Shown: positions 40,912 to 58,157 of the stretch, piece after piece
Numbering within the stretch: the stretch's first letter is position 1
Layout of the letters: the number at the start of each line of letters is the position of its first letter
The notes under the pieces: model-generated
What the model was told of the DNA's origin: nothing
Database searches by the model: none
Seen by the model: only the letters and a program-made list of their open reading frames with translations
Position numbers and translations under genes: made by a program
NCBI GenBank assembly: GCA_037379345.1
Contig: CM074517.1
Coordinates: forward strand, 3,968,001-4,032,000
Reading direction: 5' to 3'
Length of the DNA stretch: 64,000 bases
Source: Perna viridis
Lineage: Eukaryota

Positions 40912-40957
40912 ATGGGTTTCGAAACATGTGGCCCGAACGAGGTGATGGTTGTTTCGG
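40912..40957 (+). CDS. FLOT1: FLOT1 coding exon 1 ([16 protein letters not shown])
   Basis: ATG in gccgtcATGG context; donor G|GTAAGT, phase 1. Confidence 0.95.
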
Positions 40958-43900
40958 GTAAGTTTACTTGTATTAATTTCTGTTGAGTGAGGTTGCACGC
41001 CGGGCAATGCTTTAGTTGTTGTCATGTAATTATATGTTAATTCAATAATTTATGCGACGAAGTTACATCCACAGCCACAGGCATGCCACTTGAAGTACCA
41101 AGCATTGATAGAAACAAGTGGCCGTTGTTAAATGAATACTTGGTGTTATGCCATAAGGTTATATGTTTGGAATAGGTGACTTTGAAGAACATCAGAGTTG
41201 AGGATAATTGAATTTCAACTTCTTCTCTCCTGACGTCCTGTAACTTGATATGCACTAGGGGGATCCAGCTACTATTTATACTGATATAGATAGTAGTGAT
41301 TTATCAATGTTCCATGTATAATGAATTTTGATTATTTACATTAAGATAGATTTGGTAAGAACAATTTTAAGACTTTCTCCCTCCAAAACAACACAAATCA
41401 TTCTGTCGATAACAAAAAAAATCATAATTTATGTTGAAATTAGCAATATACAATGTAAATTATGAAGAAAATCTATATTATAAGTTGGTAATCAATTGGT
41501 GAGTATGAATACCCAAAATATAATAATTTGTGCCAAGAATACTTGAAGATTTTTAAAACTTGTGCATGGAACAAGTTCTGCGACCCCCTTAAATTTGTGC
41601 ATTCTTTATCAGTCGTGATTGTACAGTGAAATCGGACAATTTGGCCTGCTGACAACTCAGCCCGTGTCTCTGGACCACTACGACTGTATATTCAGGAACT
41701 AGGACCATCATATAAGACAACTCTGACCATCATACAAGACAACTCAGCCCGTGTTGAATGAGTGCTATGACTGTATTTAAGGATTGTTTGGATACTACGT
41801 CCACATACCACATTCCAGACGCCTTCGCCAAACTATGTGTGGTAGTGTTTACAGCCTGACCATCTAGACAGTGACTTTATGATTTGATTGTGTAAATGTG
41901 TTTTAAATAAACTCAGTGCTTTGTTGTTACATATATTAATAATGTGAATGTTGATGTGCTTCAAATGAACTCAGTACTTTAGTTACTTTGTTTACATGTA
42001 TTGATTATGTGAATGTTATGCCTTATTTGTTGATCTTAATAAACATATCGGTAATTTGTAGCTTTACATATTTTTATTGTATGAAAAAAGTCTCAATATA
42101 ATAGCAGAGAAAATCCACACTGACTGAGCCAGTACCAAGAAAAAAAAATCCGCACAAACATGAAAAAAACTACACAGACAAATGGTTACACAGGTTAATA
42201 TTTCAATCAGGAAATAAACAGATCTATCCATGTAAACTGTTTTCACAGAATATTCCTACATGCATACACTTCAAAATAAGACCCAGTTCACTTAGAGGTC
42301 CTGTAACACGGTCCAAGTTGTCCTGTAACACAGTATTATTAGTCCTGTTACACGATCCAGTGGTCTTATAACATGGTCCGATTAGTCCAGAAACATGGGC
42401 CAAGTGGTCTGGAGAGACAGTCCGAGAGGTCGTGGGGAGTGTTCTGGGGGCTGAGATGTCTGTAATTCATGGTACAGTATTTTGGTATTCACTCTTCTCA
42501 CTTCATTATCCTATAAATTTGTACCTATTTAGTTAAAGGGGTTCAAACTCCTCTGGTTGCAAAAATTTACCAAGTTAAATAGGGAAAAAAAAGTGACGAA
42601 ACACATCTATTGGATGCTCTCACCACATCAAAGCTTAGTCATTCTATAAAATAAGCCTTTACTTGACCCTTTGATCTATTAGAATGCCTAAGTTATGGCA
42701 GTCATTTCTCAAATATTTAAGCATGACATTAGTTGACACAACCAAGTCTCATACATGTACATGTATGTGCCCAAGCCTTACTAGCAAGGAACTTAGTGTA
42801 CTTACTGAACAAAAGAAAAAAAAACGGATATGTTGAAATGTACATTTTTTGTAACAAATGCACTGGTGTATAATCTAAATACAAAATAGTTAATACCTTC
42901 AGAGACCACCAAAAGCTCTTCAATAAGTGTAAACACACCTTTAAGTAAGCTCTAGAAGACCCAACATCAAAATCCATGGCAATTGAAAGATGACAATTTT
43001 TATAATGACACAAAAACATCTTTATGACCGATATCTTCAGATTGTGGACAGGAGCATGGCCTTAATTATCCCCTTTAATGTAAGGTCAAAAATGAAATAA
43101 AAAAAAAACACACCTGTGACCATAAAATTTGTCTTTTTACATCAAAACTGATTCAAAAGTTACTGGTAAGCAAATTTTCCTTCCTGTCAGTGTTTGAAAG
43201 CCAGTAATTGTCTCATACAACACATTTTTTTCCTTCATTACAACCTTGACATGTTTGTTTGGTTTGAAGTTAAAGTAAAAATGAGTGTTCCAATTGGTTG
43301 GTATTTTTCAAGAAAAATTCCGCGTATTGGATTGCTTGTATAGAAGTGGGATACTCACAGACTATGCACTTGCAATGCAAATACCTAGGTTCATTGTGTT
43401 TTTGATATTACATCAACATTGAGGGTCATAAGACTCAGACCTTTGCATGCTTAATGAATAGTTTTTTTTCATTGACAGGTTGCTGTCATGCAAGATCAAT
43501 ATTTGTTCCTGGAGGTCGAGTGTTTGTCTGGCCAGTCATACAGAAATTACAAAGGTATATTTTATGCATTTATTGTTTACACAAAAAAATACAAGTTCAA
43601 AATACATTGTATATGGAGAAAAAATTATTAAAACAAATTCATTACATGCATATACAAATGTATGAATATGTGCAATGTACAAATGTACATTAGAAAAACA
43701 TTTTATTTTGATACTTGTCATTAACCAGGTATTAAAATTTCAGTAAAATCATTAGTCAAGATCTGTTTTCATTGAATACATGTATGTGTGGAAGCTCAGC
43801 AGCAGGATATTTATACATTTAAATATAAAAAGTAAACGATAAAATGCATTGGTGTATTTTCCAAATAAATTCCAATAATCACATGAACATTGAAGATGTT

Positions 43901-46900
43901 GTATGACTTTTATCCAAAATGCACACCAGAATGAACCTGAATACAATGACATTGTCAATAGAGAGTCCTCATGTTTACACCTCACATGGTGTGGCTGTAT
44001 CTGTCACAGGTGTGGCACAAGTAAGTCACCCCCCATGTACATACATTCTTCATGTACAGATACATGTATGATATAGTTTGGAAAAGAAGTTGAAATATTG
44101 AAAAAGAATTGATTTGGATCAGCTATCACTTCAGTGTATTAAATTTGAAAATTTTTATGGTATAACAAAAAAATAAAACAATTCAATTCCTGTTGAAGCA
44201 AGGATTGCATCCATACTTAATTTATACATGTACCTGTATACAAAGGTCCTCTTGATGTACTAAGGAATGGTTTAGTGTAGAACTCTTTGTACATGCGTAC
44301 TTGGTTTAAAGATTATATGTTAATGTACAACAAGGAATGTTTGTCGTTGCTGTTAACAGTAGTACAATGCTTATTGTTACTTTATTTTGCTGTCGCTATT
44401 CGGTCATTGTAGTTGGTTCTACTTACATGTAGTATCAGTTCATGTCTTTATTTAAGTCATTGCTGCATTCTTCCAACTACAAAGTACACTGTACAATTTG
44501 TACTTCCCCCCATTTTCTTATCAAAATGCTGTCTATTTTGCTTCTACATTAAGTTGTGGTAAACCATGCATATAATTGACTTGTTACTTTGCACAAGTAT
44601 AGAATGCAACTGCAATATTCATCAATGGTACATTTGCATGTACATGTAAATACATTTGTACCTTCTTGAAAGAAAAGAAGAATTTTACCACATTTGACTA
44701 CCTACACGTACATGTACATGATACACATAACTAATATACTTGTACATGCACATCATTTTCTGATATTTTGCAAGGTTTTATACATGTACATGTGTATTTA
44801 AAAATTGTACATTACTTTTTATTGTTCAAGAACATGGAAACTTTCTTTATAATTAAATGAATTTCACCCTCATTAAGACTCAATGGAACTATGTTTGAAA
44901 TTAGTTATCTTATTTTAGAAAAAAATAGGAATATATTGTCTAAAAATAGGAATATATTGTCTAAAAATAGGAATAAATTGTCTAAAAATAGGAATATATT
45001 GTCCAAAAAGAGTGTCCCTAACTAAGTATTTGTATTGTACCTTAAGATGTACCTTAAACTCTGAAACAACTTGAACAAAACAAGGGCTAATTATTTCTGA
45101 ACATTTAGTCAGGATGTACAGTTGCTGCACTTGCACATGATTTGGTACTCTTTAGTGAGGTACAAAATGTTAATTTGTAGTTTTAAATTTTGAGTATTAA
45201 GTTTTTACTTTTGTTTCAAAATGTGGTATAAAAAGTAAGCTTTAGTGTTGGCAATAAATTTCAATGTTTCCTGTTCTTTTGTTCATCAAGATATATTGTG
45301 AAGTTGCATGTTAGTAATTTTACCTAATTTCATATTATTTACATTGAAATAATTTGATTTTCAGACTATCCCTTAATACCATGACATTACACATAGAAAG
45401 CCCTAATGTGTATACACAATTTGGGGTAGCTATTTCTGTCACAGGTGTGGCTCAGGTGAGCAGAAATGATCTCTGACCTTTCTTTCTTTTCAAACTTATT
45501 CTTTACTATACCAACTAGAAGTTACATGCAATAGCAGACATTGATACAACTTTGTCTTTGTTAAATATTGTAAAAAAATTATATATTGTCAGTGGTGTTG
45601 CAAACTTCAAATAAATGGTGGGGAGGAGTCAAGCTTCACTTTAATCAGGTGGGTTTGTACGAGTGTGTGGTCATGTTACATTGAATGTATATTTCTAATA
45701 AATATTGTGTATTTTGGAAATTGGTCATGTTTGCTACATGTAGACTTCAAGGGTGAAGAATAAGTTAAATGTTCTGCATTTTAAAGCTGTTTGTCACTTT
45801 TGTAGTTCCATTCACTATATAACTTGTGCATGTTACATACTTCCATTGCTAGTTACATACATAAGTTGCTGGTAGATTGATAGAAATCTATGGAGTATGG
45901 TGTAGGAAATATATATACATGTACATGCTTCAAATTTGTAGTATATTTTGTAATATACACGTACATGTATGGACAGTATACATGTATATCAAAACACAAT
46001 TGTAACATTTGAATTAATCATTACATTTGCTCATTACACAAGAATTAAAAGAATCTTCCATAGTTTGGCAATTGCTTCTGCAAAAGTTAAAATTTATGCC
46101 ATTAGGATACGCTTGTAATAAATGAGAAGAGATTTCATTCAAGTGCATGTACATGTAGCTTGAAGGATAACCTTTTACTTGTTTAATGGATTGGAAATAA
46201 TATAGTCATACTGGTTAAAATTTCTCTACCTACGTCATGTACTCCATAGATTTCTGAATTTTGCATGTAATTCCATTATGAATAGAAGGAGGTTTGTTTT
46301 CAGGTTATCCTTAAATCTTCTGACATTACCAATAGATAGTGCTAATGTTTATACTCAGCTTGGTGTAGCTGTATCTATTAAAGGTATAGCTCAGGTAAGA
46401 TAAAGTGTTCTAGCTAACATACTGAGAAGCCATTTTAGGGGGGTTGGTGGTGATAGGTCTTGATGTCTCTTGCTAAAATAACAGGGTGGAAGGCCTTTGT
46501 TCAATGTGGATGAGTTGGAAATTCTTGATGTCCTTTACTAAGTGTTAAGGCTAATATGAATGAAGGTGGTCTTATCTCAGATAGGATAGGTTAGGTAAGA
46601 GGACTTGATACTCTCACAAGCCAACCTTTGATATGATAGGTCTTCCCCCCTTCTCACATTACAGTACTACAAAGGCATTTTTATTTACAAATGAGGTATC
46701 TCGTACAGTGTAATAATCAATGTCAAGGGAAAGAACTGCATGTGTAATAATCATCAGTACATTTTCTGCATTTCCTGTTATTTTTACATTATGAAGAAGT
46801 CTCCACTGAGTTGATAAGGTCACCCATTTGCCTGCCTTTTTTATTCACATGGTAACTTGTACATGTAAGTAGTATGTGTCATTGTAGCATAAGGATAAAT

Positions 46901-49900
46901 ACCAATTAAACTCAAATCTATGTTTCTATTGATTGTTTGGCATTGTATTTTTTATTCTTCCAAGCACTGGGAAAAATAGTAGTATTTCAACACAAATACA
47001 AACTACATATATGATAAATGTACATGTAGTGTCTGGTGAATACACTTTCTGTTTAAAGGAAAAGTGGTAGGAAAAGTATTGTGGCAAAAGGTCATTTTAT
47101 ATTAAATGACTTTATTAAACCTTTAACTCATTATCTATTCCTTTCTGAGCCAAGTTAAGTTCTTGATGTGGTGAAAAAGTTAGCTTGAATGCTTGTTGAT
47201 TCTAAACTTATATTAAGAGATACATATAGCTTACACATTCAGAGTTCAAATAGCCTTTCACAATGGCAAAGTTCATCCCACCTGCCCATAAGTTTGTTGT
47301 AAGGCCACCCCATTGAATTATTTTCTTTTGTCTAGGCAGGGTGGTTCTTAAATCAAACTCAAACTACTTCTATATACATGTACATAATTTTGTCTAAGGA
47401 AAAAGAAAACTGCTATAATCATATAAAATTATTAAATTTGATATATTATAGTGAAAATTCTCTCCCCAACCATTCAATTATTAAAACAATACATAAAGGA
47501 ACAATGTGGGAACCTATGTATTAAATATCAAATTATAGTGAATAGTACAAATTTATCTTGGATTAAACTGGTGTCTCCTTCATTCTTTTAAGTCAATCAA
47601 ATCCATAGATGATAAAGAGATAAATTCTAACATACACTTAAAAGCTTGACTATGAGTTATCCCCTCTAATTGATCAAGCCTCTTTTTCCTCCTAAATTGT
47701 CAACAAAGAGAGGAAATACAAGATATTATCCTAATAAGTCCTGGAAAGAAGATTAATTAGGAAACTTAATGATAGAGATATTCAGTTCTAATCCTGTTAT
47801 AAACATACGTGTAGAATATAAATGTCCTTAGTTGCAACTTATGCCAGTCTCCATACACGGTTCAGTGTAGTACAAAAAAAAAACATACATGTACATTTTG
47901 TAGTGCTTTTTTGCAGAGCTACTGTTTGAGTATTGTGTCATACACATGTATTATATGAACTTTAGTTAGAAAGCACTATAAGCACTTTATTCTATTTTAT
48001 GTAAGATTGTTTTTGTTTGTTGGGGTTTAACGCCTGAGCAGCAATATTTCAGCTATATTCAGGTGAATTTTTTAGTAAGAGACAATTCTCCTAGAAACTA
48101 AAATGCAATTTCAAACATTGTAAGGACAACAGTGCTAGTTAATTATATGATCATTTGATATCTTCAATATGCTTCCTATGAATCCTATGAAATTTGAACA
48201 TGTTTAAAAACATTGACCTAAGGCAGTTAGTCTGATTAAAGTAAAACTAGGTATGCTATGCTAAACATCTTGTCTTTTGGTAGTGTTTTCATTAATAGAA
48301 AGAAAGGGATTAAAGCTACTTATTTACATGATACTGTCAGGAATTAATTGAAATCCTTCACCAGCTATGCCTAATAACTACATTTGTTATAGAAACACTG
48401 GCTGGTCATGTGACTAATTTATTATATTTATATCATTTAATTAATCTGATCTTTTTATACATGTAGTACTGGGAAGCTCTTTATACATATAATACTGGGA
48501 AGCTCTTTATACATGTATAGAAATAAATAATACACACTGATATAATAAATTCCTTTTAGTAGAATTGCACAGTAAGAACTTATAAATTATATAATTTCAA
48601 TTTCTTGTTGATAAGTCAGATGCATCTCTATTATACATTCAATACAGTGTTTGTAACATATCTTACAGTTAATTTATATTTGTTAATGATTATAAATTCA
48701 GCTTCTGTTTCATTGTTACATGTACATTATACATGATAAATGCAAAAAAAAAAATTTTTGTTATATCTATGTCAGTTGTTTACTAAATTTCACCAAACCA
48801 ATGTAGTGATTGTCATAATGATGTTAATTTTTATTACCCATGTCAGGTGAAGATTCAAGGTTCCAACCAAGATATGTTAGCATCAGCGTGTGAACTTTTC
48901 TTAGGCAAGAATGACACTGAGATTAGAAAAGTTGCCCAAGAAACACTTGAAGGACATCAGAGGGCTATCATGGGAAATATGACTGTTGAGGTTCATATCA
49001 TTCGTATTTAGCACTTTCATACTGTAACCTTGTGGATAAACTACAAATGTACATATACAAGACTTTTGGTCATGTAGAAGTTATAAGTTTCTTTCAAGTT
49101 TAGTATTAGTTTCAACATTTGAGCCTGGGCAAGAAATAATTATTGAAATTAGCTGGATATTTTGAGATTTTCAAGTTTCATGAGTTATATAACCCTTTTC
49201 CCTATGATTCTGTCTGAATAATTAATTGCTTGACATTTGGCATGGCAGAAATTCTAGTGATCATCCATCTGTTTTAGGAAACCCACATAAGGAACATAGC
49301 ATACTTGTTTTTGATTGGTCAACTCAGTTCAAGGTCAAAAGAATGCAACACAATCACAAAACAACCAATTGTTATGACTACTTTTTCATATCATTTGTTT
49401 TTTGGTTTCACATCATCTGAGGGGTAATATAATTATAAGTATCTTACAATCCAAGAAGTGAGTAAAAGAACCAAATCATAGAGAATACAAACAAATACAG
49501 GTACATGTAGAAATGTATTTTATTAGGATTTCCAAGCTTAAATAAAGTAAATCTTTACAGATTTCTGTATGGCAGAAAAATGGAGGGTTTTGAGTATATT
49601 AAACTAAGAGAACTAGAGATCATTTAATGCTTACTACTGCATTCATGGTAGCATTTCGATATTCATGCTTTTTAAAGAGTAAAATATAAAGAGATACCAG
49701 TTTGCTAGGCATCTTATAGTTCTAGAAAATTTATGCTTTTGGCAGGAAATCTACAAAGACCGTAAGAAGTTTTCTAAAGCTGTTTTTGAAGTGGCATCGT
49801 CAGACTTGGTAAACATGGGTATCTTTGTAGTCAGTTATACCATTACAGATATTAGAGATAGCGAGGTATGTAGAAGAAACAAGAATTCTTTTTATTTAAA

Positions 49901-52900
49901 GATAGAATGTATGTTAAATGATTTTTCAACTGGAGAATAATGATATAATGGCTTGTATGATACTGCTAAGATTTCTACATACTAAGTACTATTGTACTTG
50001 TAAATTTGTTCTGTTTTAGAAATTTTACAAAACAAAACAGAATCACTATGGTTATATTTTAAAAGTGGTAATGTTTAGCACCTTATAAATGTATGTAGTG
50101 CCTAAGTGATGCATTGTGATTTTACGAAATCATTCTAAATGCATTGCGTATTCATTGTTTTTTTCTTTACAATTTCCCTGAAAGTAGGTGAGTAGTCACT
50201 TTAGATGACTATATGGTTGTTTTAACTTTTAGCAGCCCATCTAAGTATTGTATCTAGGATGTTGGAAATAAGCGTTGTAACCTGAGCAATTGGCTACAAC
50301 CTAAAAATTAATTGAATATTTAAGTAATTAATATAATTAAAGTAATTGTTGATCCCAATTTCATTTAAAATTATAAATTTCACAATAGAAAGGAGAACTG
50401 TTCAAATGTACAAGATAAAAAAAACCACTGTAATATTGAATTGGAATTACTTAGAATGAAAAAGTTTCATGATATTACTATGGTACAACTTTATCAACCT
50501 TAGTATAAAGTATCCATAAGAAAGATCCAGTGTTATTTGTATTGCGTTACGAATTTCAGGGATACTTGCATGCCTTGGGTATGAAACGTACTGCAGAGGT
50601 AAAACGTGATGCAAGAATCGGTGAAGCAGAGGCTCAAAGAGATGCTGGAATTAAGGTGAAGTTTTTATGTTTTTCAGGAACCTTGCAGCCTATTGTCACA
50701 GTGTTGATTCACTGCTTGCTGCTGGTTTATGTTGTATATTTAAACTGTTACTATTGATTCACTAACATTTATCATCAGGGGTATTTGAAGTCACTTGGTT
50801 TAGCCCGTACTGCACAAGTTAAAAGGGATGCTCGTATTGGTGAGGCTGAAGCCCAGAGGGATGCTGGTATTAAGGTACCCTGTACTAATATCACTGTTGT
50901 GTCTTATTATTTTAGTGTCACACAAATAACCATTTCATACATAAAATTGGGATGGGATTTTCCACAGATTCACTTATTTACTTTAGATTTTGTCAGTTTC
51001 GGCTTCCTTGTTGTTCCTTGTATCTCATCCCAGATTAAATAATATAGATAATATTCACATTCATCTCTCACATGTTTATTACCCAAATATATTCCATCCT
51101 GACCCTCTATGTCACCTTTTAAAACACTCTAGAGTCAACATTCTTTGTTGGATGTTGACTATACATGGTTTATTATTAGTCCTGAAGAAGATCTCAGTAC
51201 CCTAGCTTTACAAGATGATAGGTCAAATTCACAGGAAATTAAGACCTCTGGGATGTAACATTTTGTGTTGCTCTTATCATTTAATAAATAAGTTCTTTGA
51301 TCAATTTTACCTCAGAATTCATACATTAATGTTTCATTTATACCACAATCCTCATTATAACAGTTTCCAGTTTCATCCTTAAATCATTAAGCACTTATTG
51401 GGTATCAACCCTTCAAATGTATTTAATTTATATAATAATACTTGTCTGTGCTTTTTCTTTAAATTGTTCATTGACATTCGCATTGTTTTGTCTAAGTACA
51501 ACTGAAGAAGTTTTTTTATCTTTAAATAAATACAACACTGTATAACAAAACTGGCCTTTGTGTATGGAATGGATTACTGTGTATTATGGTAGTTAGCTGT
51601 ACCTTGCATTCTGAGACCCCTCCTTATTGAATTTTTCCTATGATTTCATTGGTTGAATATTTGATCCTGATTTGGTTTGCTTGGTATGTGAATGTAATGC
51701 TATTGTTATGTTTAAATACCATATTCTCATCTACTTTGATTTGCATGCACACCTTTGTTTAAGAACATATGTAAAAGTTTTTTTTTTTTTTGAAATTAAC
51801 GAATGATACTTAATCATGCGTATCAGGTTGAAAGTATAATGCAGGTTAAAAGTTGTTCAGGATGTTTTTTATTGAAATGCAACACGTAAGTTATCAATGC
51901 ATTCTCTTTTTATGATCAAAACTATCACTTTCAGTTGATCAGACTTCAAAGAAGATAGAATATTTCTGAAATTCAATTCAAATATACATACAAGCAGAAC
52001 TGCTGAATGTATTATTCAATGTTCACTCTGATTAGTCTGAATGTATCATTCAATGTTCACTCTGATTAGTCTGAATGTATTATTCAATGTTCACTCTGAT
52101 TAGTCACTGCTGAATGTATTATTCAATGTTCACTCTGATTAGTCTGAATGTATTATTCAATGTTCACTCTGATTAGTCTGAACGTATTACTCAATGTTCA
52201 CCCTGATTAGTCACTGCTGAATGTATTATTCAATGTTCACTCTGATTAGTCACTGCTGAATGTATTATTCAATGTTCACTCTGATTAGTCTGAATGTAAT
52301 ATTCAATGTTCACTCTGATTAGTCACTGCTGAATGTATTATTCAATGTTCACTCTGATTAGTCACTGCTGAATGTATTATTCAATGTTCACTCTGATTAG
52401 TCACTGCTGAATGTATTATTCAATGTTCACTCTGATTAGTCACTGCTGAATGTATTATTCAATATTCACTCTGATTAGTCTGAATGTATTATTCATTGTT
52501 CACTCTGATTAGTCACTGCTGAATGTATTAAGGCTAACCTTGGCTGGTATTGATATTTTTAAAACATACATGTATTACTAACCTTTTGTAAAACCATAAT
52601 GTAACAGCTTGGAAATTTCTACTTCAATTAAAAACGCTTGAATATGGAATGAAGTGGGTTTTCCCCTCCATTTTTATCATTATATGTTGTGAGCATGTAC
52701 TATATGTATTTTCATGTTTTTCATTCATAACAATATGAATCATTTGTGTTCCTTATATTCTTAGATTGTTCGATTTTTGACATGTTATAGGAAGCACAAA
52801 CCTGGTTCTAAATTTTACTAACACTAACTTGACAGTTCAGTAGAGATATGTAGAACAATATAGAGAGTGTATCAGAGACAGACTACTCTCTCTGGAATTA

Positions 52901-55900
52901 CTTACTTATTAATGCATTGTTCGGTATTGATTTGTTCCCTGATAGCAACTCTCATCTAAATATCAATAATTAATGATTTTATATGGTATTATGTAACCAG
53001 ACATGGCTTTAGTCAATAGGGTATAGAAACATGAGTTCCTGCCCTTAGTGGACAGTATTGGCTGTATGTGAAAAGCACATTATTGTTATTTTAGAAAGAT
53101 CAGTTTTTTAAGATGTAATTGTATTCCACTTAAAGGGTCAAGGTTTATTTCCTAATCATAGAAGTTTGGGGATGATTAGGAAACATTGTGTCTGTATGTC
53201 TGTTTACTTAATAATCAATTTAACCCTAACTTTGTACTCTCATTGGGCATTTCTATGTGTTTTCTTCAAATAGTTGTTGCCCACCTTTCATAGTATTTAG
53301 CTTTATTCTATATATCTACCCCCACAAAAAGTTACAGGAATAAAATGTCTTTGATCAGTCCTTTCATAGTATCTCCATTCCTGGATAGTGGTTTCATTTT
53401 TTGACAGATTTTCTCCAATCTTCATGGAATTTCAGTAGCAACATAAGCTTTATAGGAATCAATTTTTTTAGAGGATGTCCACTCCTTGATAGAGATACTT
53501 AGCTAAAAATGATTAATTAAGGCTTGTGGCTGAATTGGGCCTTTAAACTTTAGTGATTAATTAAGGCTTGTAACTGGATTGGGCCTTCAAACTCTACTGA
53601 ACGGTTAAGGCTTGTAGCTGAATTGGGCCTTCAAACTCCAGTGATTAATTAAGGCTTGTGGCCTTGATCGTGCATGTAAATGTGCACGATGGAATATAAT
53701 TACTGTTGGAAGACTCCAAAAGGAGGTCAAGAAGTGTTTTAAGGGGGTATTTTCTTTCTGAAATTGCTCACAGTATTTCTAGTTAAATTATATATTTATT
53801 ATTTTTACAACTCATAATTTCCATATAAATACAACACATTATTTATTGCATACTGTTGGAATGGTATAACAAAATGGAACCCAAAATGAGTAGTTTTTTT
53901 AAAAATTTAATTGTTTTGGGTATTTTTCAGTGTATAGTTATAAATTATAATGTTCAGATTTCATAAATTTATTCTAATTATTCATATCATTATACTATAT
54001 ATACTAATTTATTAATAATAATATCATAACAATTTGATATTTTGGATAAACAAAGTTTATTTTTAAATGCTTCCTACTATTAAGAATTAACTGTAAAATG
54101 GTTGTTTTCTCAACTGTGAATATTAAACAGTAGTTGCAGACCTTTTTAGCATGATAATCTTTCTTTGGTCAGATTGCATTTCACTTTTCCTATTATGTGG
54201 GGCTTTTTTTTAGGGGTATTGGAACTGGACTTTTCTTTATTGCACATATGAAGGAACATGGGATATCAATATGCTCATTTAAGCTTTTTTAATTGGTTTC
54301 TGCCACAAAAGTTTAGTTTAGCTCTGAACAGATTTGAAAGTTAAACTTGCACAGATGAAAGTATGAAAGAGAAGAAAGACAAATATTGATTTTAAAGTCT
54401 TTCAGTTTATGGTTAAGGTAACTAGTACTGAGTTTTTCCAGTTGGGACCTTTTGCATTGCTTGGTTTTCATAATGAGTTAAATAGTATTACTAAAAGTGA
54501 TAAAACATGTGTTGACTTTGTAGGAAGCCTTAGCTGAAGAGAAGAGAATGACAGCTCGCTACTCAAATGATGTTGACATTGCTCAATCCCAGAGAGACTT
54601 CGAGCTGAAGAAAGCCCAATATGACCAAGAAGTCTTCACCAAGAAAGCGACTTCAGAACTAGCTTATGATTTACAGGTAATAAAAAAATGGATCATTTGT
54701 AAATAGTTAAAATGATGGTTAATTACATTCCAAGTTCTTATTGACTTGTTAAAAAAATAACTTATCTGTGTATTTTAACTTGAGGAAGCCAAACACCTGG
54801 TTAATCCATAATTCCTTCATTGAAAATGGAAATTTTGTTATGAATTTTGACATAATTAATATTTTTCTTTTCAAAATGTAGTTATTTTCTAGGGAATCTT
54901 GGTTATTTTTATGTAATGTTGGTTTGTTTGTTCATTTCATACCTGCCCCATGCAGGTCCAGGTGTTAAAAGAATAGGCCTGCAGCAACACTAAGCTTGTC
55001 TTAAAAGGCGACTGAATTGTGCTCAGAAATCTAGCCGGGGGCCAGGCCCTCTGCCCACAGAGCAACTGGGATGTGTACCCCAGGTGGTGGAATGGGGTAC
55101 CCCTGGCATGTTACATGCTGGGCTTGTCAGGCTATAATACGGAAAACCTGACTGCAAACCATAGTGGTGCACTGTGTTGGGAAAGATGTCACGTTCCTCG
55201 CACGTTAAAGAACCCTACTGTGGTATTTGATGTCACAGGAGGCTAAATTGCCAGACCCTACCCATCCCCCCTTTTTCTAGTGGCAATTATCCTTGTGTCC
55301 CATCCTTTTTTTCATTTTATCATCATCATTTCATGTTCATTTTATCATCCCTTTCATGTTCATCACCTGAACATAGTTGAAATATCGCTGTTCAGGCATT
55401 AAACCCCAACAATCAATCAATCATTTCATACCTGGACAATTACTTGAGTATGAGAATAGATCTTAATGAAATAAAGGAAGGCTGGTATTGATTTTGGGGG
55501 TGTGACTTGAACCATTATAAAATTACCACTTTAATATGTCAGTTTGTGAAATAGTAAAAATACATTTTTGGAAGTATATATAAATTATTTTTCTATAGGC
55601 TGCTAAAACAAAACAGGCAATTAAAGAGGAACAAATGCAAATAAAAGTCATTGAAAGATCACAGCAGATTCAACTGCAAGAGCAGGAAATTACCCGACGT
55701 GAGCGCGAGCTTGATGCTCAAATCCGTAAACCAGCTGAAGCTGAGAAATTCAGACTGGAGAAAATTGCTGAAGCTAACAGGTAATCTTTAAACAATTGTG
55801 TTTGATATTATATGAATCTTCCTTCATGTTATTTAAATAGAATTCATAGTATACGAAAATCTCATAGATTAGCTTGTTTAACATCTGTCATATCACATGG

Positions 55901-58157
55901 TAATTTTGATTTTATAATTGTTTTTCACAGGAAGAGAATTATTTTGGAAGCTGAAGCAGAGGCTGAATCCATTAAGGTAAGAAAGAAAAGCACATCTTTT
56001 AGCCAGGCTACCCAGTAGTGGCAGATTCAGGGGTCATTGACCCTCTGTCTTCAAAATCTGTTGATCTAACCTGCTACCTGACTACTCAACATCATGCCAA
56101 TAAACCATGTTGCTGGATTTTGTAGAATAGTTGGTAGAGTTGCATATGATTTATGGTAATTGCATCTATTTGATGAATATTGTCTAGAGCATAGATTTTA
56201 TTGCACAAGCTTCAGTATGCAATATTATACTATGCACGTGATAATATTCATCAATATCCTCTTTACTATATAGTAACAAATTTATGACATCCTTTTGTGC
56301 TTGTGTGGAAACAATACATCATTAAAAAAAATGATTAAGATAGTGACCTAGTGTTATTACTGATCTGAAGGTTATATTGAAATTAGTGCTAATTCTATAT
56401 CCACTCTATCATTTTATTCCTGTATATTTGACTGGTCATTATCCATCATCTTGTCTTAACAAACGAACAAGTTAAAAACATAGAAAAAAATAAACCTTGT
56501 TGTCATTTGTACACCATGATCATCATAATTGACCATGACACTAGATATTTTTTTTATGAATGAGACAGTAGTAGCTAAGTTGCGTCAGTTGTGATTTGTG
56601 TTCTGTTTGAAACAACAAAGTTTAATTTTACAGCTGAGAGGTGATGCTGAAGCCTACTCCATTGAAGCTAAAGCTAAGGCCGAAGCTGAACAGATGGCCA
56701 AAAAAGCTGATGCATGGAAAGACTACCAGGATGCTGCTATGATTGATATGATCCTGGAAACTCTACCAAAGGTAGGTTGGAGGATGGTGACAGAGGGTTA
56801 TATAGGACTAGAAACTCTACCAAAGGTAAGTTGGAGGATGGTGACAGAGGGTTGTATAGGATTTCAAGAAACTTTACCAAACGTAAGTTGGAGGATGGTG
56901 GCAGAGGGTTATATAGGACTTCAAGAAACTTTACCAAAGGTAAGTTGGAGGATGATGGCAGATGGTATGTAGGACTTCTAGAAACTCTACCAAAGGTAAG
57001 TTGAAAGATGGTGACAGAGAGTTATATAGGACTTCAAGAAACTTTACCAAAGGTAGGTTGGAGGATGGTGACAGAGGGTTATATAGGACTTCAAGAAACT
57101 TTACCAAAGGTAAGTTGGAGGATGATAGCAGAGGATATGTAGGACTTCTAGAAACTCTACCAAAGGTAAGTTGGAGGATGGTGACAGAGGGTTATATAGG
57201 ACTTCTAAAAAACGTTACCAAAGGTAAGTTGGAGGATGGTGACAGAGGGTATGTAGGACTTCTAGAAACTTTACCAAAGGTAGGTTGGAGGTTGTATGGC
57301 TGAGGGTTATATAGGGCTATCTGGAAATTTTACCAAAGTTAGGTTGGAGGATGCGTGACTGAGAGTTTTATTGGACTTCTAGAAACTCTTATAGAACTGT
57401 AATAAGAAGCTGATGCTGAACAGCTTTAGCATGTTTTGTTGGAGAATACAAGTCAGGTGCATTTTTGCAGATATTTAGAGTAGGAAAAAACTAAAAATAC
57501 TTCTCTGGAAAAAAGAGGAAACTGTCAGTAATATAATATTTAACATTTCTTTTATAATTGTAGATTGCTGCTGAAATTTCTGCTCCTTTAAGCAGCACAA
57601 AGAAGATAACAATGGTATCATCTGGCAAAGGATCAGTTGGTGCAGCCAAGGTCACTGGAGAAGTCCTGGACATCATGGAAAAGATCCCATTAGTTGTAGA
57701 AAACCTTACAGGCATCAACATCTCAAAGGTACTCTTAATCATTTTTTTATAAGTTTTATGGTATCAGACCTGATGCATTGTTCAACAACTGATAAATGAA
57801 AATTGACAAAATTATAAGTATGTAACTAAAGTCTAAGCAGTGAATTACAAAAACGCAACGAAAATCAAGTTTGACTCTTACTGCATACCTCTTAGAAGGT
57901 TTGAATAAGTTACCGGTAGAGAAATAGTACGTAATGTGTAGTGAATTGATATAAAGGTTATCACTGCTGTACTGTTACTTTTGTGATGTGTGTTTATATA
58001 TGTTCATGCTTGTCTAATTTATAAGGCATTCAAAAAGTAGTACTGTACATAAAATTTATAATTTATACAGAGTTTTTTGATGCATGCTTCATGTTAGATT
58101 CTGTATTTGAGTTTTTGTCTTTTTTAGAACATCAAGGCTGCCACAAGGAGACCGTGA
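40912..58157 (+). CDS. FLOT1: Flotillin-1 (SPFH/band 7 family), 12 exon positions, 428 aa per isoform, with alternative exons 3a/3b/3c and 6a/6b
   Basis: Join 40912-40957, 43479-43554, [43930-44020 | 45365-45455 | 46304-46394], 48847-48990, 49746-49865, [50560-50655 | 50779-50874], 54524-54676, 55599-55780, 55931-55976, 56634-56771, 57564-57728, 58128-58157 = 1287 nt, all GT-AG with compatible phases. Motifs [58 protein letters not shown] match flotillin-1. Confidence 0.97.
41285..42530 (+). repeat. Family C copy in FLOT1 intron 1, interrupted at about 41620-42468 by a MITE-like insert with GACAACTCAGCCC sub-repeats
   Basis: 41285-41610 matches family C; its tail (cattatcctat) resumes at about 42475-42525; insert ends gggctgagatgtc, inverse of its left sub-repeats. 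Confidence 0.6.
43479..43554 (+). CDS. FLOT1: FLOT1 exon 2 ([25 protein letters not shown])
   Basis: ttttcattgacag| acceptor, AG|GTATAT donor, phase 1 to 2. Confidence 0.95.
43930..44020 (+). CDS. FLOT1: FLOT1 alternative exon 3a ([30 protein letters not shown])
   Basis: 91 nt, ccag| acceptor with weak pyrimidine tract, CAA|GTAAGT donor, open frame. Confidence 0.9.
44919..45005. repeat. 21-bp tandem repeat AAAAATAGGAATATATTGTCT x4
   Basis: Direct reading. Confidence 0.9.
45365..45455 (+). CDS. FLOT1: FLOT1 alternative exon 3b ([30 protein letters not shown])
   Basis: 91 nt, ttttcag| acceptor, CAG|GTGAGC donor, open frame. Confidence 0.92.
46304..46394 (+). CDS. FLOT1: FLOT1 alternative exon 3c ([30 protein letters not shown])
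   Basis: 91 nt, tttgttttcag| acceptor, CAG|GTAAGA donor, open frame. Confidence 0.9.
48007..48067 (-). mobile_element. 5'-truncated SINE tail (same family as 54946-55420)
   Basis: Reverse complement matches 55363-55415; imperfect tttta(t)gtaaga duplication on both sides. Confidence 0.75.
48847..48990 (+). CDS. FLOT1: FLOT1 exon 4 ([11 protein letters not shown]...[17 protein letters not shown])
   Basis: 144 nt, phase 0-0, weak donor GAG|GTTCAT. Confidence 0.95.
49746..49865 (+). CDS. FLOT1: FLOT1 exon 5 ([10 protein letters not shown]...[11 protein letters not shown])
   Basis: 120 nt, phase 0-0, GAG|GTATGT donor. Confidence 0.95.
50560..50655 (+). CDS. FLOT1: FLOT1 alternative exon 6a ([32 protein letters not shown])
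   Basis: 96 nt, tttcag| acceptor, AAG|GTGAAG donor. Confidence 0.92.
50779..50874 (+). CDS. FLOT1: FLOT1 alternative exon 6b ([32 protein letters not shown])
   Basis: 96 nt, consensus-like branch point CACTAAC at 50760-50766, catcag| acceptor, AAG|GTACCC donor. Confidence 0.92.
51999..52530. repeat. 34/39-bp dimorphic minisatellite, about 14 copies
   Basis: Unit CTGAATGTATTATTCAATGTTCACTCTGATTAGT with or without CACTG. Confidence 0.95.
53510..53662. repeat. 44-bp tandem repeat, about 3.5 copies
   Basis: TGATTAATTAAGGCTTGTGGCTGAATTGGGCCTTcAAACT... unit. Confidence 0.85.
54524..54676 (+). CDS. FLOT1: FLOT1 exon 7 (EALAEEKRM...SELAYDLQ)
   Basis: 153 nt, phase 0-0, QRDFELKKA motif. Confidence 0.95.
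54946..55420 (+). mobile_element. Full-length SINE-like retroposon in FLOT1 intron 7
   Basis: 14-bp target duplication TCATTTCATACCTG (54932-54945, 55421-55434); (CAAT)n tail; central GCACGTTAAAGAACCC motif. Confidence 0.85.
55599..55780 (+). CDS. FLOT1: FLOT1 exon 8 ([11 protein letters not shown]...[19 protein letters not shown])
   Basis: 182 nt, phase 0-2, coiled-coil flotillin region. Confidence 0.95.
55931..55976 (+). CDS. FLOT1: FLOT1 exon 9 ([15 protein letters not shown])
   Basis: 46 nt, phase 2-0, strong splice sites. Confidence 0.95.
56634..56771 (+). CDS. FLOT1: FLOT1 exon 10 (LRGDAEAY...MILETLPK)
   Basis: 138 nt to first donor AAG|GTAGGT; further donor copies lie downstream. 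Confidence 0.93.
56757..57390 (+). repeat. 54-59-bp minisatellite spanning the FLOT1 exon 10/intron 10 junction, about 11 copies
   Basis: Unit GAAACTYTACCAAAG|GTARGTTGGAGGATGGTGACAGAGGGTTATATAGGACTTCWA. Confidence 0.95.
57564..57728 (+). CDS. FLOT1: FLOT1 exon 11 (IAAEISAPL...LTGINISK)
   Basis: 165 nt, phase 0-0. Confidence 0.95.
58128..58157 (+). CDS. FLOT1: FLOT1 terminal coding exon (NIKAATRRP*)
   Basis: Strong pyrimidine tract acceptor tttttgtcttttttag|; gives total length expected for flotillin-1. Confidence 0.8.
   Translation, partial: NIKAATRRP

What the first reader, a model, noticed from the sequence alone, without database searches (positions are those of the whole stretch)
40912..58157. 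Combinatorial flotillin-1 isoform system: 3 x 2 exon choices, up to x4 with repeated donors
Two independent duplicated-exon clusters in one scaffold gene give 6 isoforms, and up to 24 if the in-frame repeated donors of exon 10 are used. Knowledge: flotillins form large hetero-oligomeric membrane-attached assemblies. Inference: modest isoform numbers could give large subunit-composition diversity, a small Dscam-like code for membrane microdomains. Whether this is already described for mollusc FLOT1 could not be checked here.
Basis: inference. Interest (0 to 1): 0.82.

Follow-up and report, generated by a model that had tools for sequence, protein, structure and literature searches.

The report
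Alternative exon clusters in mussel flotillin-1
A mussel flotillin-1 gene carries three interchangeable versions of exon 3 and two of exon 6, an old and real alternative-splicing system that genome annotations of related molluscs already show, while the proposed extra variety from repeated splice donors is probably not used.

Summary
Window 40912-58157 (+) is a 12-coding-exon flotillin-1 orthologue (428 codons) of a mytilid mussel. It has three tandem 91-nt copies of exon 3 and two tandem 96-nt copies of exon 6, all with intact AG/GT sites. A 57-nt minisatellite re-copies the exon-10 donor.

Every exon copy has been kept as coding sequence, whether compared with its sister copies or with its Mytilus orthologue.

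RNA contigs from four studies show E2-3b-E4 in all four runs. They show E5-6a-E7 in all four and E5-6b-E7 in one, with no 6a-6b joint. Exon 3c use was not seen. Exon 3a and the repeated donors could not be tested with reads.

The system is not new to databases. RefSeq lists same-length flotillin-1 isoforms differing only in these two blocks in Mytilus, Haliotis (5 x 2) and other gastropods and bivalves. The Mytilus loci hold 5 + 2 copies. The 3a-type exon is shared with gastropods and a chiton. I found no paper describing it.

The repeated donors match the human F7 intron-7 case, where only the first donor is used. The "Dscam-like code" reading has no support; regulated isoform switching is likelier. 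The scan had already noted donor-echo repeats elsewhere in this genome.

Verdict: real, ancient, modestly interesting.

The parts
40912..40957 (+). Exon 1 (coding part), ATG at 40912, donor CGG|gtaagt
43479..43554 (+). Exon 2 (76 nt), ends in phase 2
   Evidence: its last bases appear as the loose end spliced onto E3b in four RNA runs
43930..44020 (+). Exon 3a, 91 nt, the pan-molluscan 'RMNLN...' type
   Evidence: Orthologue of Mytilus copy 1. Sits in a clade with gastropod and chiton exons, support 97/89. pN 0.074 against pS 0.75 versus Mytilus. Not covered by the read stretch.
45365..45455 (+). Exon 3b, 91 nt, the form seen in the four RNA runs tested
   Evidence: Joint 45455->48847 and an E2 loose end at 45363 in four RNA runs. 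Its 30 residues are identical to Mytilus copy 2 although pS is 0.76.
46304..46394 (+). Exon 3c, 91 nt, mytilid-specific type
   Evidence: Groups with Mytilus copies 4 and 5, support 96/89. pN 0.21 against pS 0.57. No 3c->E4 joint in four runs. One X10 contig, 46059-46395, ends at its donor.
48847..48990 (+). Exon 4 (144 nt), flotillin-1 residues 71-118
   Evidence: PDB 9bq2_B flotillin-1 E=2.4e-16, against flotillin-2 at about 1e-9. E4->E5 joint in four runs.
49746..49865 (+). Exon 5 (120 nt)
50560..50655 (+). Exon 6a, 96 nt, 'KRTAE' type; second residue corresponds to Tyr160 of flotillin-1
   Evidence: Joint 49865->50560 and an E7 loose end at 50656 in four runs. Aligns to flotillin-1 residues 160-190. 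pN 0.054 against pS 0.68.
50779..50874 (+). Exon 6b, 96 nt, 'ARTAQ' type, 123 nt downstream of 6a
   Evidence: Joint 49865->50779 and an E7 loose end at 50875 in run X9 only. pN 0.021 against pS 0.61.
54524..54676 (+). Exon 7 (153 nt)
55599..55780 (+). Exon 8 (182 nt)
55931..55976 (+). Exon 9 (46 nt)
56634..56771 (+). Exon 10 (138 nt), authentic donor AAG|gtaggt
   Evidence: The Mytilus alignment stops at this donor.
56757..57387 (+). 57-nt minisatellite (11.1 units). Its first unit spans the E10 end and donor. It adds nine echo donors, three of them in frame and open.
   Evidence: Only the query's own place was found in the 723-Mb genome. Absent from both Mytilus loci.
57564..57728 (+). Exon 11 (165 nt)
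58128..58157 (+). Exon 12 (last 9 codons plus TGA)
   Evidence: Matches the ...NIKAATRR end of mytilid proteins.

Best explanation
The locus is the flotillin-1 orthologue of a mytilid mussel. It has two clusters of mutually exclusive exons that arose by tandem exon duplication. One of exons 3a/3b/3c and one of exons 6a/6b enters each mRNA, so every isoform has 428 codons.

For exon 3 the reading frame enforces exclusivity. Each copy is 91 nt. Skipping all three puts a TGA at the second codon of exon 4. A second included copy is read out of frame and stops after 3 codons (3b) or 11 codons (3c). Such mRNAs would be removed by nonsense-mediated decay (inferred).

Exon 6 has no frame barrier. The copies are 96 nt and the 123-nt intron between them is too long for steric exclusion. 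Its exclusivity is seen in RNA contigs but the mechanism is unknown.

Exon 3 encodes flotillin-1 residues 41-70, part of the membrane-inserted SPFH1 domain. Exon 6 encodes residues 159-190, the SPFH2-CC1 hinge that begins at the Fyn-target Tyr160. In the human cage structure V61/I63 (exon 3) and Y160/L161/L164 (exon 6) form one hydrophobic core. The mussel variants keep those core residues and differ around them. The likely function is therefore regulated tuning of membrane contact and of hinge or assembly behaviour (inferred, not shown).

The clusters are ancient and evolve by birth and death. The 3a-type exon is shared with gastropods and a chiton. The 6a/6b pair is shared with gastropods. 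Mytilus has five exon-3 copies, one of which is broken in M. californianus.

The exon-10 minisatellite is a young, local 'donor echo'. Its extra donors most likely stay silent.
For: - **Gene identity and model:**
- **Copies kept as coding sequence:** between paralogous copies pS is 0.49-0.80 against pN 0.15-0.25, and the flanks cannot be aligned. Against the Mytilus orthologues pS is 0.57-0.76, while pN is 0.074 (3a), 0 (3b), 0.21 (3c), 0.054 (6a) and 0.021 (6b). Constitutive exons give 0-0.108.
- **Frame barrier for exon 3:**
- **RNA evidence:** exon depth is about 1000 against intron depth of about 10. GT..AG joints E3b->E4, E4->E5 and E5->E6a occur in four runs from four studies. E5->E6b occurs in X9 (depth 420 against 822 for 6a). 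Loose ends show E2->3b, 6a->E7 and 6b->E7. No 6a->6b joint was seen.
- **Relatives:** RefSeq isoforms of equal length differ only in residues ~42-69 and ~160-188 in Mytilus, Haliotis, Biomphalaria, Littorina and Bradybaena. The Mytilus loci L003 and L004 hold 5 + 2 copies with intact sites, and copy 4 is frameshifted in L003.
- **Orthology:** blastn and the exon tree, with the 3a clade at 97/89.
- **Structure:** PMC11260169 and PMC13000311.
- **Donor echo:**. Precedent in PMC1557585.
Against: - Only exon 3b was seen spliced in this species. No 3c->E4 joint appeared in four runs.
- Exon 3a lay outside the single 6-kb read stretch allowed.
- The runs are Logan contigs. They drop rare variants and cannot give proportions or link the exon-3 choice to the exon-6 choice.
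- Exon 3c is clearly less constrained than the others (pN 0.21).
- No conserved docking or selector pairing was found for either cluster. How one exon is picked remains open.
- The functional reading rests on human structures, not on mussel data.
Confidence: 0.8

Rival explanations
1. One reading: the two clusters plus the in-frame echo donors act as a combinatorial, Dscam-like code. It would give up to 24 isoforms mixed stochastically into 44-mer cages to label membrane microdomains.
For: - Six combinations are possible, and four donors are in frame and open.
- Flotillin cages hold 22 flotillin-1 subunits (PMC11260169).
- The flotillin-2 gene of this genome has no duplicated exons, so all variety would come from flotillin-1.
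Against: - Four RNA runs from four studies show a single exon-3 form. Three of them show a single exon-6 form.
- The alternatives number 3 and 2, not tens.
- No docking or selector architecture was found.
- The donor array is absent from Mytilus and is not under coding constraint; its frame breaks at the fifth unit.
- In the F7 precedent the echo donors are silent (PMC1557585).
Confidence: 0.05
2. Exon 3c, and conceivably 3a, is a little-used or decaying relic in this species. In practice the gene would make only 3b with 6a or 6b.
For: - No 3c->E4 joint was seen in four runs.
- Exon 3c has the highest pN (0.21).
- Exon copies do die in this cluster: Mytilus californianus copy 4 is frameshifted.
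Against: - 3c keeps perfect AG/GT sites, an open frame and pN below pS.
- Its Mytilus orthologue is used in RefSeq isoform X4.
- 3a is as constrained as the constitutive exons (pN 0.074) and belongs to a clade kept since before the bivalve-gastropod-chiton split.
- Contigs drop rare variants.
- In X10 a contig ends exactly at the 3c donor, at five times the neighbouring intron depth.
Confidence: 0.2
3. The echo donors after exon 10 are used as alternative 5' splice sites. They would add 18, 37 or 56 residues before the C-terminal cap region, or trigger decay from the later out-of-frame donors, and so modulate protein form or level.
For: - Six of the nine echo donors match the U1 consensus better than the authentic donor (8/9 against 7/9).
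- Three echoes are in frame with no stop.
Against: - The F7 study showed that even stronger downstream pseudo-sites do not compete with the first donor (PMC1557585).
- Earlier notes of this scan report that similar arrays elsewhere in this genome use only the first donor (s1-751513, s1-757973; not checked here).
- All mytilid proteins found run ...ETLPK-IAAEIS without an insert.
- The array is absent from Mytilus.
Confidence: 0.1
4. Exons 6a and 6b are not strictly exclusive. Because both are multiples of three, transcripts with both or neither are made and translated.
For: - There is no frame barrier.
- The 123-nt intron has a good branch-site-like CACTAAC before 6b.
- Some models without isoform labels include both copies: the 453-aa M. 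edulis and 460-aa Batillaria proteins.
Against: - No 6a->6b joint was seen in four runs, although both exons are used in X9.
- All RefSeq isoforms in about ten molluscs have one copy and constant length.
- A 32-residue insert at the hinge would shift the register of the helical wall of the cage (inference from PMC11260169).
Confidence: 0.1

Closest known systems
RefSeq flotillin-1-like isoform sets of other molluscs (Mytilus californianus X1-X4, M. trossulus X1-X3, Haliotis rufescens X1-X8, Biomphalaria, Littorina, Sinanodonta)
   Same: Same gene and the same two variable blocks (residues about 42-69 and 160-188), with constant protein length. Orthologous exon types: window 3a = Mytilus copy 1, 3b = copy 2 (30/30 residues), 3c = copy 5. 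The 6a type is 'KRTAE' and the 6b type 'ARTAQ'.
   Different: The cluster here is smaller: 3 exon-3 copies against 5 in the Mytilus loci and 5 annotated in Haliotis. The exon-10 donor minisatellite is found only here. Those sets are automatic annotations, and no paper describing them was found.
Classical mutually exclusive exon clusters derived from tandem exon duplication (for example muscle myosin heavy chain clusters across Metazoa, PMC3912159; insect nAChR alpha6, PMC5111602)
   Same: Tandem homologous exons of equal length and phase. A length that is not a multiple of three makes double inclusion or skipping nonsense. The clusters are old and the alternatives are few.
   Different: The host gene is a membrane-scaffold (SPFH) protein for which no such clusters have been discussed. 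The second cluster (exon 6) lacks the frame barrier.
Human F7 intron-7 37-bp minisatellite whose first unit spans the exon-intron boundary (PMC1557585)
   Same: The first unit includes the exon end and the donor, so the authentic donor is followed by a row of near-identical pseudo-donors.
   Different: The unit is 57 nt and a multiple of three, so the first three echoes stay in frame. The echoes are slightly stronger than the authentic donor. Whether they are used was not tested here.
Drosophila Dscam1 exon 4/6/9 clusters
   Same: Several independent clusters of mutually exclusive exons in one gene, with isoforms entering a multimeric or recognition assembly.
   Different: Three and two alternatives rather than 12, 48 and 33. 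No docking-site or selector pairing was found. There is no evidence of stochastic choice or of isoform-specific recognition. RNA contigs show one dominant form.

Membership tests
Flotillin-1 (reggie-2) orthologue | Colinear match over the whole length of flotillin-1 (SPFH domain, coiled coil, C-terminal flotillin region) | tested here: met
   All 12 exons align in order to full-length flotillin-1 proteins. Full-length relatives carry PF01145 + PF15975. Single exons are too short for Pfam.
Flotillin-1 (reggie-2) orthologue | Closer to flotillin-1 than to flotillin-2, with a separate flotillin-2 gene in the genome | tested here: met
   E4 scores 61 bits to flotillin-1 against 40 to flotillin-2. 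E6 scores 37 against 29 and E3 29 against 16. A second, flotillin-2-like gene lies on contig C9.
Flotillin-1 (reggie-2) orthologue | Hinge tyrosine (Tyr160) and the core residues L161, L164, R168, V172 | tested here: met
   Both 6a and 6b read G-Y-L-x-x-L-G-x-x-R-T-A-x-V.
Mutually exclusive exon cluster from tandem exon duplication | Adjacent homologous exons of equal length and phase with intact splice sites | tested here: met
   3 x 91 nt and 2 x 96 nt, all AG...GT.
Mutually exclusive exon cluster from tandem exon duplication | Each copy kept under purifying selection | tested here: met
   Constraint is weaker for 3c (pN 0.21 against pS 0.57).
Mutually exclusive exon cluster from tandem exon duplication | Exactly one copy per mature mRNA | tested here: inconclusive
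   Exon 6: E5-6a-E7 and E5-6b-E7 are seen and no 6a-6b joint. Exon 3: only 3b was seen, 3a was not covered and 3c was not seen. Contigs cannot exclude rare forms. Relatives' isoforms all carry one copy.
Mutually exclusive exon cluster from tandem exon duplication | A mechanism that enforces exclusivity | tested here: inconclusive
   Exon 3: the frame gives a stop within 1-12 codons on skipping or double inclusion. Exon 6: no frame barrier, the 123-nt intron rules out steric exclusion, and no conserved pairing was found.
Splice-donor-anchored minisatellite (F7 intron-7 type) | First repeat unit spans the exon end and the authentic donor, and later units carry donor consensus | tested here: met
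   The array starts 15 nt before the E10 donor. There are ten donor-like sites matching CAG|GTAAGT at 7-8 of 9 positions.
Splice-donor-anchored minisatellite (F7 intron-7 type) | Only the first donor is used | not tested
There is indirect support only: the precedent PMC1557585, and no insert in any mytilid protein.
Dscam-type stochastic isoform code | Many alternatives chosen stochastically per cell | tested here: not met
   There are three and two alternatives. One exon-3 form appears in four runs from four studies. Per-cell choice cannot be tested with these tools.
Dscam-type stochastic isoform code | Docking-site and selector RNA pairing conserved across species | tested here: not met
   No intronic block is conserved with Mytilus beyond the exon edges. 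Inverted repeats are not positionally shared.

The most novel reading that the evidence does not exclude
The two alternative blocks may be structurally coupled rather than independent. Exon 3 supplies V61/I63 and exon 6 supplies Y160/L161/L164 of one hydrophobic core at the SPFH2-CC1 hinge. Phosphorylation of that hinge switches cage assembly in the human complex. Molluscs would then have kept, for more than 500 million years, a splice-level way of setting how readily flotillin cages tilt, disassemble or bind membrane. Exon choice may be steered by Rbfox-type UGCAUG sites, which are enriched in the exon-3 cluster of all three mytilid loci examined.
Probability: 0.25. Interest if true: 0.55.

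Novelty: new member of a known kind. Interest (0 to 1): 0.38.

Why it matters
Flotillin cages have only recently been solved, and how cells vary their properties is an open question. Here, and across molluscs, evolution has kept alternative versions of two segments. One is a strand-and-loop segment of the membrane-inserted SPFH1 domain. The other is the hinge that starts at the regulatory Tyr160.

These natural variants could be swapped into recombinant cages to test what those segments control.

For genome annotation, the locus shows that ab initio models can wrongly string the copies together. It also shows that cluster size changes between related mussels (3 copies here, 5 in Mytilus).

It does not open a new kind of mechanism. 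Mutually exclusive exons and donor-echo minisatellites are both known.

Tried and rejected
- **Pfam exon by exon:** only sub-threshold hits, because the pieces are too short. Identity was settled with PDB sequences and full-length relatives instead.
- **PF15975 against the own genome:** found nothing, not even this gene, because the domain is split by introns. A single-exon protein query found the paralogue.
- **A fourth exon-3 copy or a third exon-6 copy:** none, even at E = 10.
- **The 374-nt stretch bounded by the perfect 16-nt inverted repeat as a MITE:** not supported; the search of the own genome found only its own place.
- **The exon-10 minisatellite as a dispersed satellite:** not supported; the search found only its own place.
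- **Conserved docking or selector pairings:** blastn of the whole gene against two Mytilus loci found nothing intronic beyond the exon edges. Inverted-repeat scans of the exon-6 region in three loci share nothing by position.
- **Transcript-derived peptides of this species carrying 3a or 3c:** only genomic ORFs of other species, plus the window's own 3b ORF.
- **Haliotis locus through the look-up of encoding contigs:** not on record.
- **Literature:** no paper on flotillin alternative exons in molluscs.
- All later work used coordinates only.
- the spliced protein was never assembled or sent to any search. Every search used single exons by reference, or database proteins.
Full report
**What is there**

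Stop-to-stop reading of the + strand and inspection of every AG/GT border give a 12-coding-exon gene from ATG 40912 to TGA 58157. With one exon 3 and one exon 6 the coding sequence is 1287 nt (428 codons).

Exon 4 matches human flotillin-1 residues 71-118 in PDB 9bq2_B (E = 2.4e-16), better than flotillin-2 at about 1e-9. Exon 3 maps to residues 41-70 and exon 6 to residues 160-190. tblastn with full-length Mytilus proteins reproduces every exon and finds exactly three exon-3 and two exon-6 copies, with no weaker extra copy. The protein is about 90% identical to Mytilus flotillin-1-like, so the genome (723 Mb, 46 contigs) is that of a mytilid mussel other than Mytilus.

Searches used single exons by reference or database proteins, and that joined step is left out.

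**The duplicated exons**

E3a (43930-44020), E3b (45365-45455) and E3c (46304-46394) are each 91 nt in the same phase. E6a (50560-50655) and E6b (50779-50874) are each 96 nt and lie 123 nt apart. All have AG...GT borders.

| Comparison | pS | pN |
|---|---|---|
| Between paralogous copies | 0.49-0.80 | 0.15-0.25 |
| 3a vs Mytilus orthologue (L004) | 0.75 | 0.074 |
| 3b vs Mytilus orthologue | 0.76 | 0 |
| 3c vs Mytilus orthologue | 0.57 | 0.21 |
| 6a vs Mytilus orthologue | 0.68 | 0.054 |
| 6b vs Mytilus orthologue | 0.61 | 0.021 |
| Constitutive exons vs Mytilus | 0.57-0.72 | 0-0.108 |

Between copies, synonymous sites are near saturation and the intron flanks do not align. Unused exons would not keep that pattern. 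Only 3c is visibly relaxed.

**Exclusivity**

For exon 3 the frame does the work:
- After an included copy, 3b read from its first base stops at codon 4 and 3c at codon 12.
- Skipping all copies puts TGA at the second codon of exon 4.

Exon 6 has no such barrier. The 123-nt intron, with a CACTAAC branch-like site before 6b that is conserved in Mytilus, is too long for steric exclusion.

**RNA evidence**

I laid Logan contigs of four runs from four studies on 45300-51100. Their record type is only guessed as RNA. Exon depth of about 1000 against intron depth of about 10, together with GT..AG joints, shows they are RNA.

| Junction | Runs |
|---|---|
| E2->3b (loose end at 45363) | all four |
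| 3b->E4 | all four |
| E4->E5 | all four |
| E5->6a | all four |
| 6a->E7 (loose end at 50656) | all four |
| E5->6b and 6b->E7 | X9 only (depth 420 against 822 for 6a) |
| 6a->6b | none |
| 3c->E4 | none |

One X10 contig (46059-46395) ends exactly at the 3c donor, at about five times the neighbouring intron depth. Exon 3a and the exon-10 donors lay outside the one stretch allowed. Contigs show presence, not absence or proportion.

**Relatives**

Because an exon-sized query cannot reach full-length kin in the word search, I used the one representative search with exon 4. I then ran word searches with an alignment of exon pieces and with the closest full-length hit.

- RefSeq lists flotillin-1-like isoforms of identical length in Mytilus californianus (X1-X4), M. 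trossulus and M. galloprovincialis.
- The same holds for Haliotis rufescens (X1-X8), H. cracherodii, Biomphalaria, Littorina and Bradybaena, and for the models of Sinanodonta.
- Within each of these species the isoforms differ only in the exon-3 block and/or the exon-6 block.
- Haliotis shows five exon-3 types and two exon-6 types.
- The brachiopod Lingula has three exon-3 variants combined with two exon-2 variants.
- Oysters instead vary a micro-insert between exons 5 and 6.

The two Mytilus loci (L003, L004) hold five exon-3 copies and two exon-6 copies in the same order. Copy 4 is frameshifted in M. californianus.

DNA-level orthology is 3a = copy 1, 3b = copy 2 and 3c = copy 5. A tree of the 30-residue blocks is weakly resolved overall. 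It does recover a 3a-type clade holding bivalves, gastropods and a chiton (97/89), and it places 3c with Mytilus copies 4 and 5 (96/89). The 'KRTAE' and 'ARTAQ' exon-6 types are shared by bivalves and gastropods.

The system therefore predates the split of those classes, and cluster size changes by birth and death. The flotillin-2-like gene of this genome (contig C9) has single, partly fused exons and no duplicates.

**What the variants may change (inference from human structures)**

- SPFH1 inserts into the inner leaflet.
- Tyr160 sits in the SPFH2-CC1 hinge.
- A Y160E mutation abolishes cage assembly.
- V61 and I63 (exon 3) pack with Y160, L161 and L164 (exon 6) in one hydrophobic core. R168 and V172 contact the neighbouring flotillin-2 (PMC11260169, PMC13000311).

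The mussel variants keep Y160, L161, L164, R168, V172 and V61. They differ at positions 162, 163, 166, 167 and 171, and at many exon-3 positions including 63, 65 and 66. Tuning of membrane contact and hinge behaviour is the most economical reading, but it is untested.

**Exon choice**

No conserved docking or selector pairing was found. TGCATG, the Rbfox-type motif, is enriched in the exon-3 cluster core of all three mytilid loci:

| Locus | Observed | Expected | Shuffles (of 500) reaching the count |
|---|---|---|---|
| Window | 5 | 1.4 | 8 |
| L003 | 7 | 2.1 | 4 |
| L004 | 6 | 2.3 | 10 |

Sites lie 42-60 nt upstream of 3b and 3c. This is a lead, not a result.

**The repeated donors**

The 57-nt x 11.1 array (56757-57387) begins 15 nt inside exon 10. 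It yields ten donor-like sites. The first four are in frame and open (+0, +54, +111, +168 nt), and the rest meet a stop.

The search of the own genome found only this copy, and the array is absent from both Mytilus loci. No mytilid protein carries an insert at that point.

The build is that of the human F7 intron-7 minisatellite. There the pseudo-donors are functional but never compete with the first donor, even when they are stronger (PMC1557585). Earlier notes of this scan report many such arrays elsewhere in this genome, with only the first donor used. I did not check those. I rate use of the echoes at about 0.1.

**Verdict**

The x 4 multiplier and the Dscam-like code are unsupported.

The feature is already visible in automatic annotations of related molluscs, though I found no paper on it. 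It is a new member of a known kind, with moderate interest for flotillin structure-function work.

Noticed in passing
window 44226-47898: The self-complementary motif ACATGTACATGT (one mismatch allowed) occurs 15 times in the window against 0.37 expected. Eleven of these lie between exon 3a and exon 4. Both Mytilus loci also have a copy 170-200 nt upstream of their last exon-3 copy. Any two copies could pair in the pre-mRNA. Its function is unknown.
   Followed up: partly
window 45882-45897 and 46240-46255: A perfect 16-nt inverted repeat lies between exons 3b and 3c, with its 3' arm 48 nt upstream of the 3c acceptor. The search of the own genome found only this copy of the 374-nt unit, so it is not a MITE. 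Run X2 carries A>G at 45882, the outermost pair of the stem.
   Followed up: partly
window 43630-46694; L003 4414-8754; L004 7545-11879: TGCATG (the Rbfox-type motif) is enriched on the sense strand in the exon-3 cluster of all three mytilid loci: 5, 7 and 6 observed against 1.4, 2.1 and 2.3 expected.
   Followed up: partly
window 48013-48066: A segment of about 50 nt in intron 3 collects a summed contig depth of about 9000 in all four RNA runs, with many different loose ends on both sides. It looks like a fragment of a dispersed, transcribed repeat.
   Followed up: no
window 55473-55501: A 29-nt intronic element matches, at 87-93%, several places in the introns of both Mytilus flotillin loci. 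It is probably the conserved core of a mussel interspersed repeat.
   Followed up: no
window 51999-52530: A 39-nt minisatellite (14.4 units, 90% matches) lies in intron 6 and is not anchored on an exon.
   Followed up: no
G000:C9 about 12402500-12411200 (L009, L008): A flotillin-2-like gene with fewer introns: the equivalents of exons 3+4 and of 5+6 are fused. It has no duplicated exons.
   Followed up: partly
L003 7855-7957 (Mytilus californianus): The fourth of five exon-3 copies carries a frameshift in M. californianus but is intact in L004. This is exon death inside the cluster.
   Followed up: yes
proteins P0318-P0332 (Lingula), P0287-P0310 (Crassostrea), Clunio protein P0169: Other lineages vary flotillin-1 differently. 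Lingula has three exon-3 variants times two exon-2 variants. Oysters have a variable micro-insert between exons 5 and 6. A midge model strings two copies of the exon-11 equivalent in tandem.
   Followed up: partly
window 40912-40957 and 43479-43490: The N-terminus reads MG...C followed by a Cys-Cys pair at residues 18-19. That pattern resembles the myristoylation and palmitoylation sites reported for human flotillin-2, not the flotillin-1 Cys34 site. This rests on the sequence and PMC13000311 and is an inference only.
   Followed up: no
window 46059-46395: In run X10 one contig covers 245 nt of intron plus exon 3c and stops exactly at the 3c donor, at depth 24.5 against about 5 nearby. It may be a low-level 3c-containing or partly processed transcript.
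   Followed up: no
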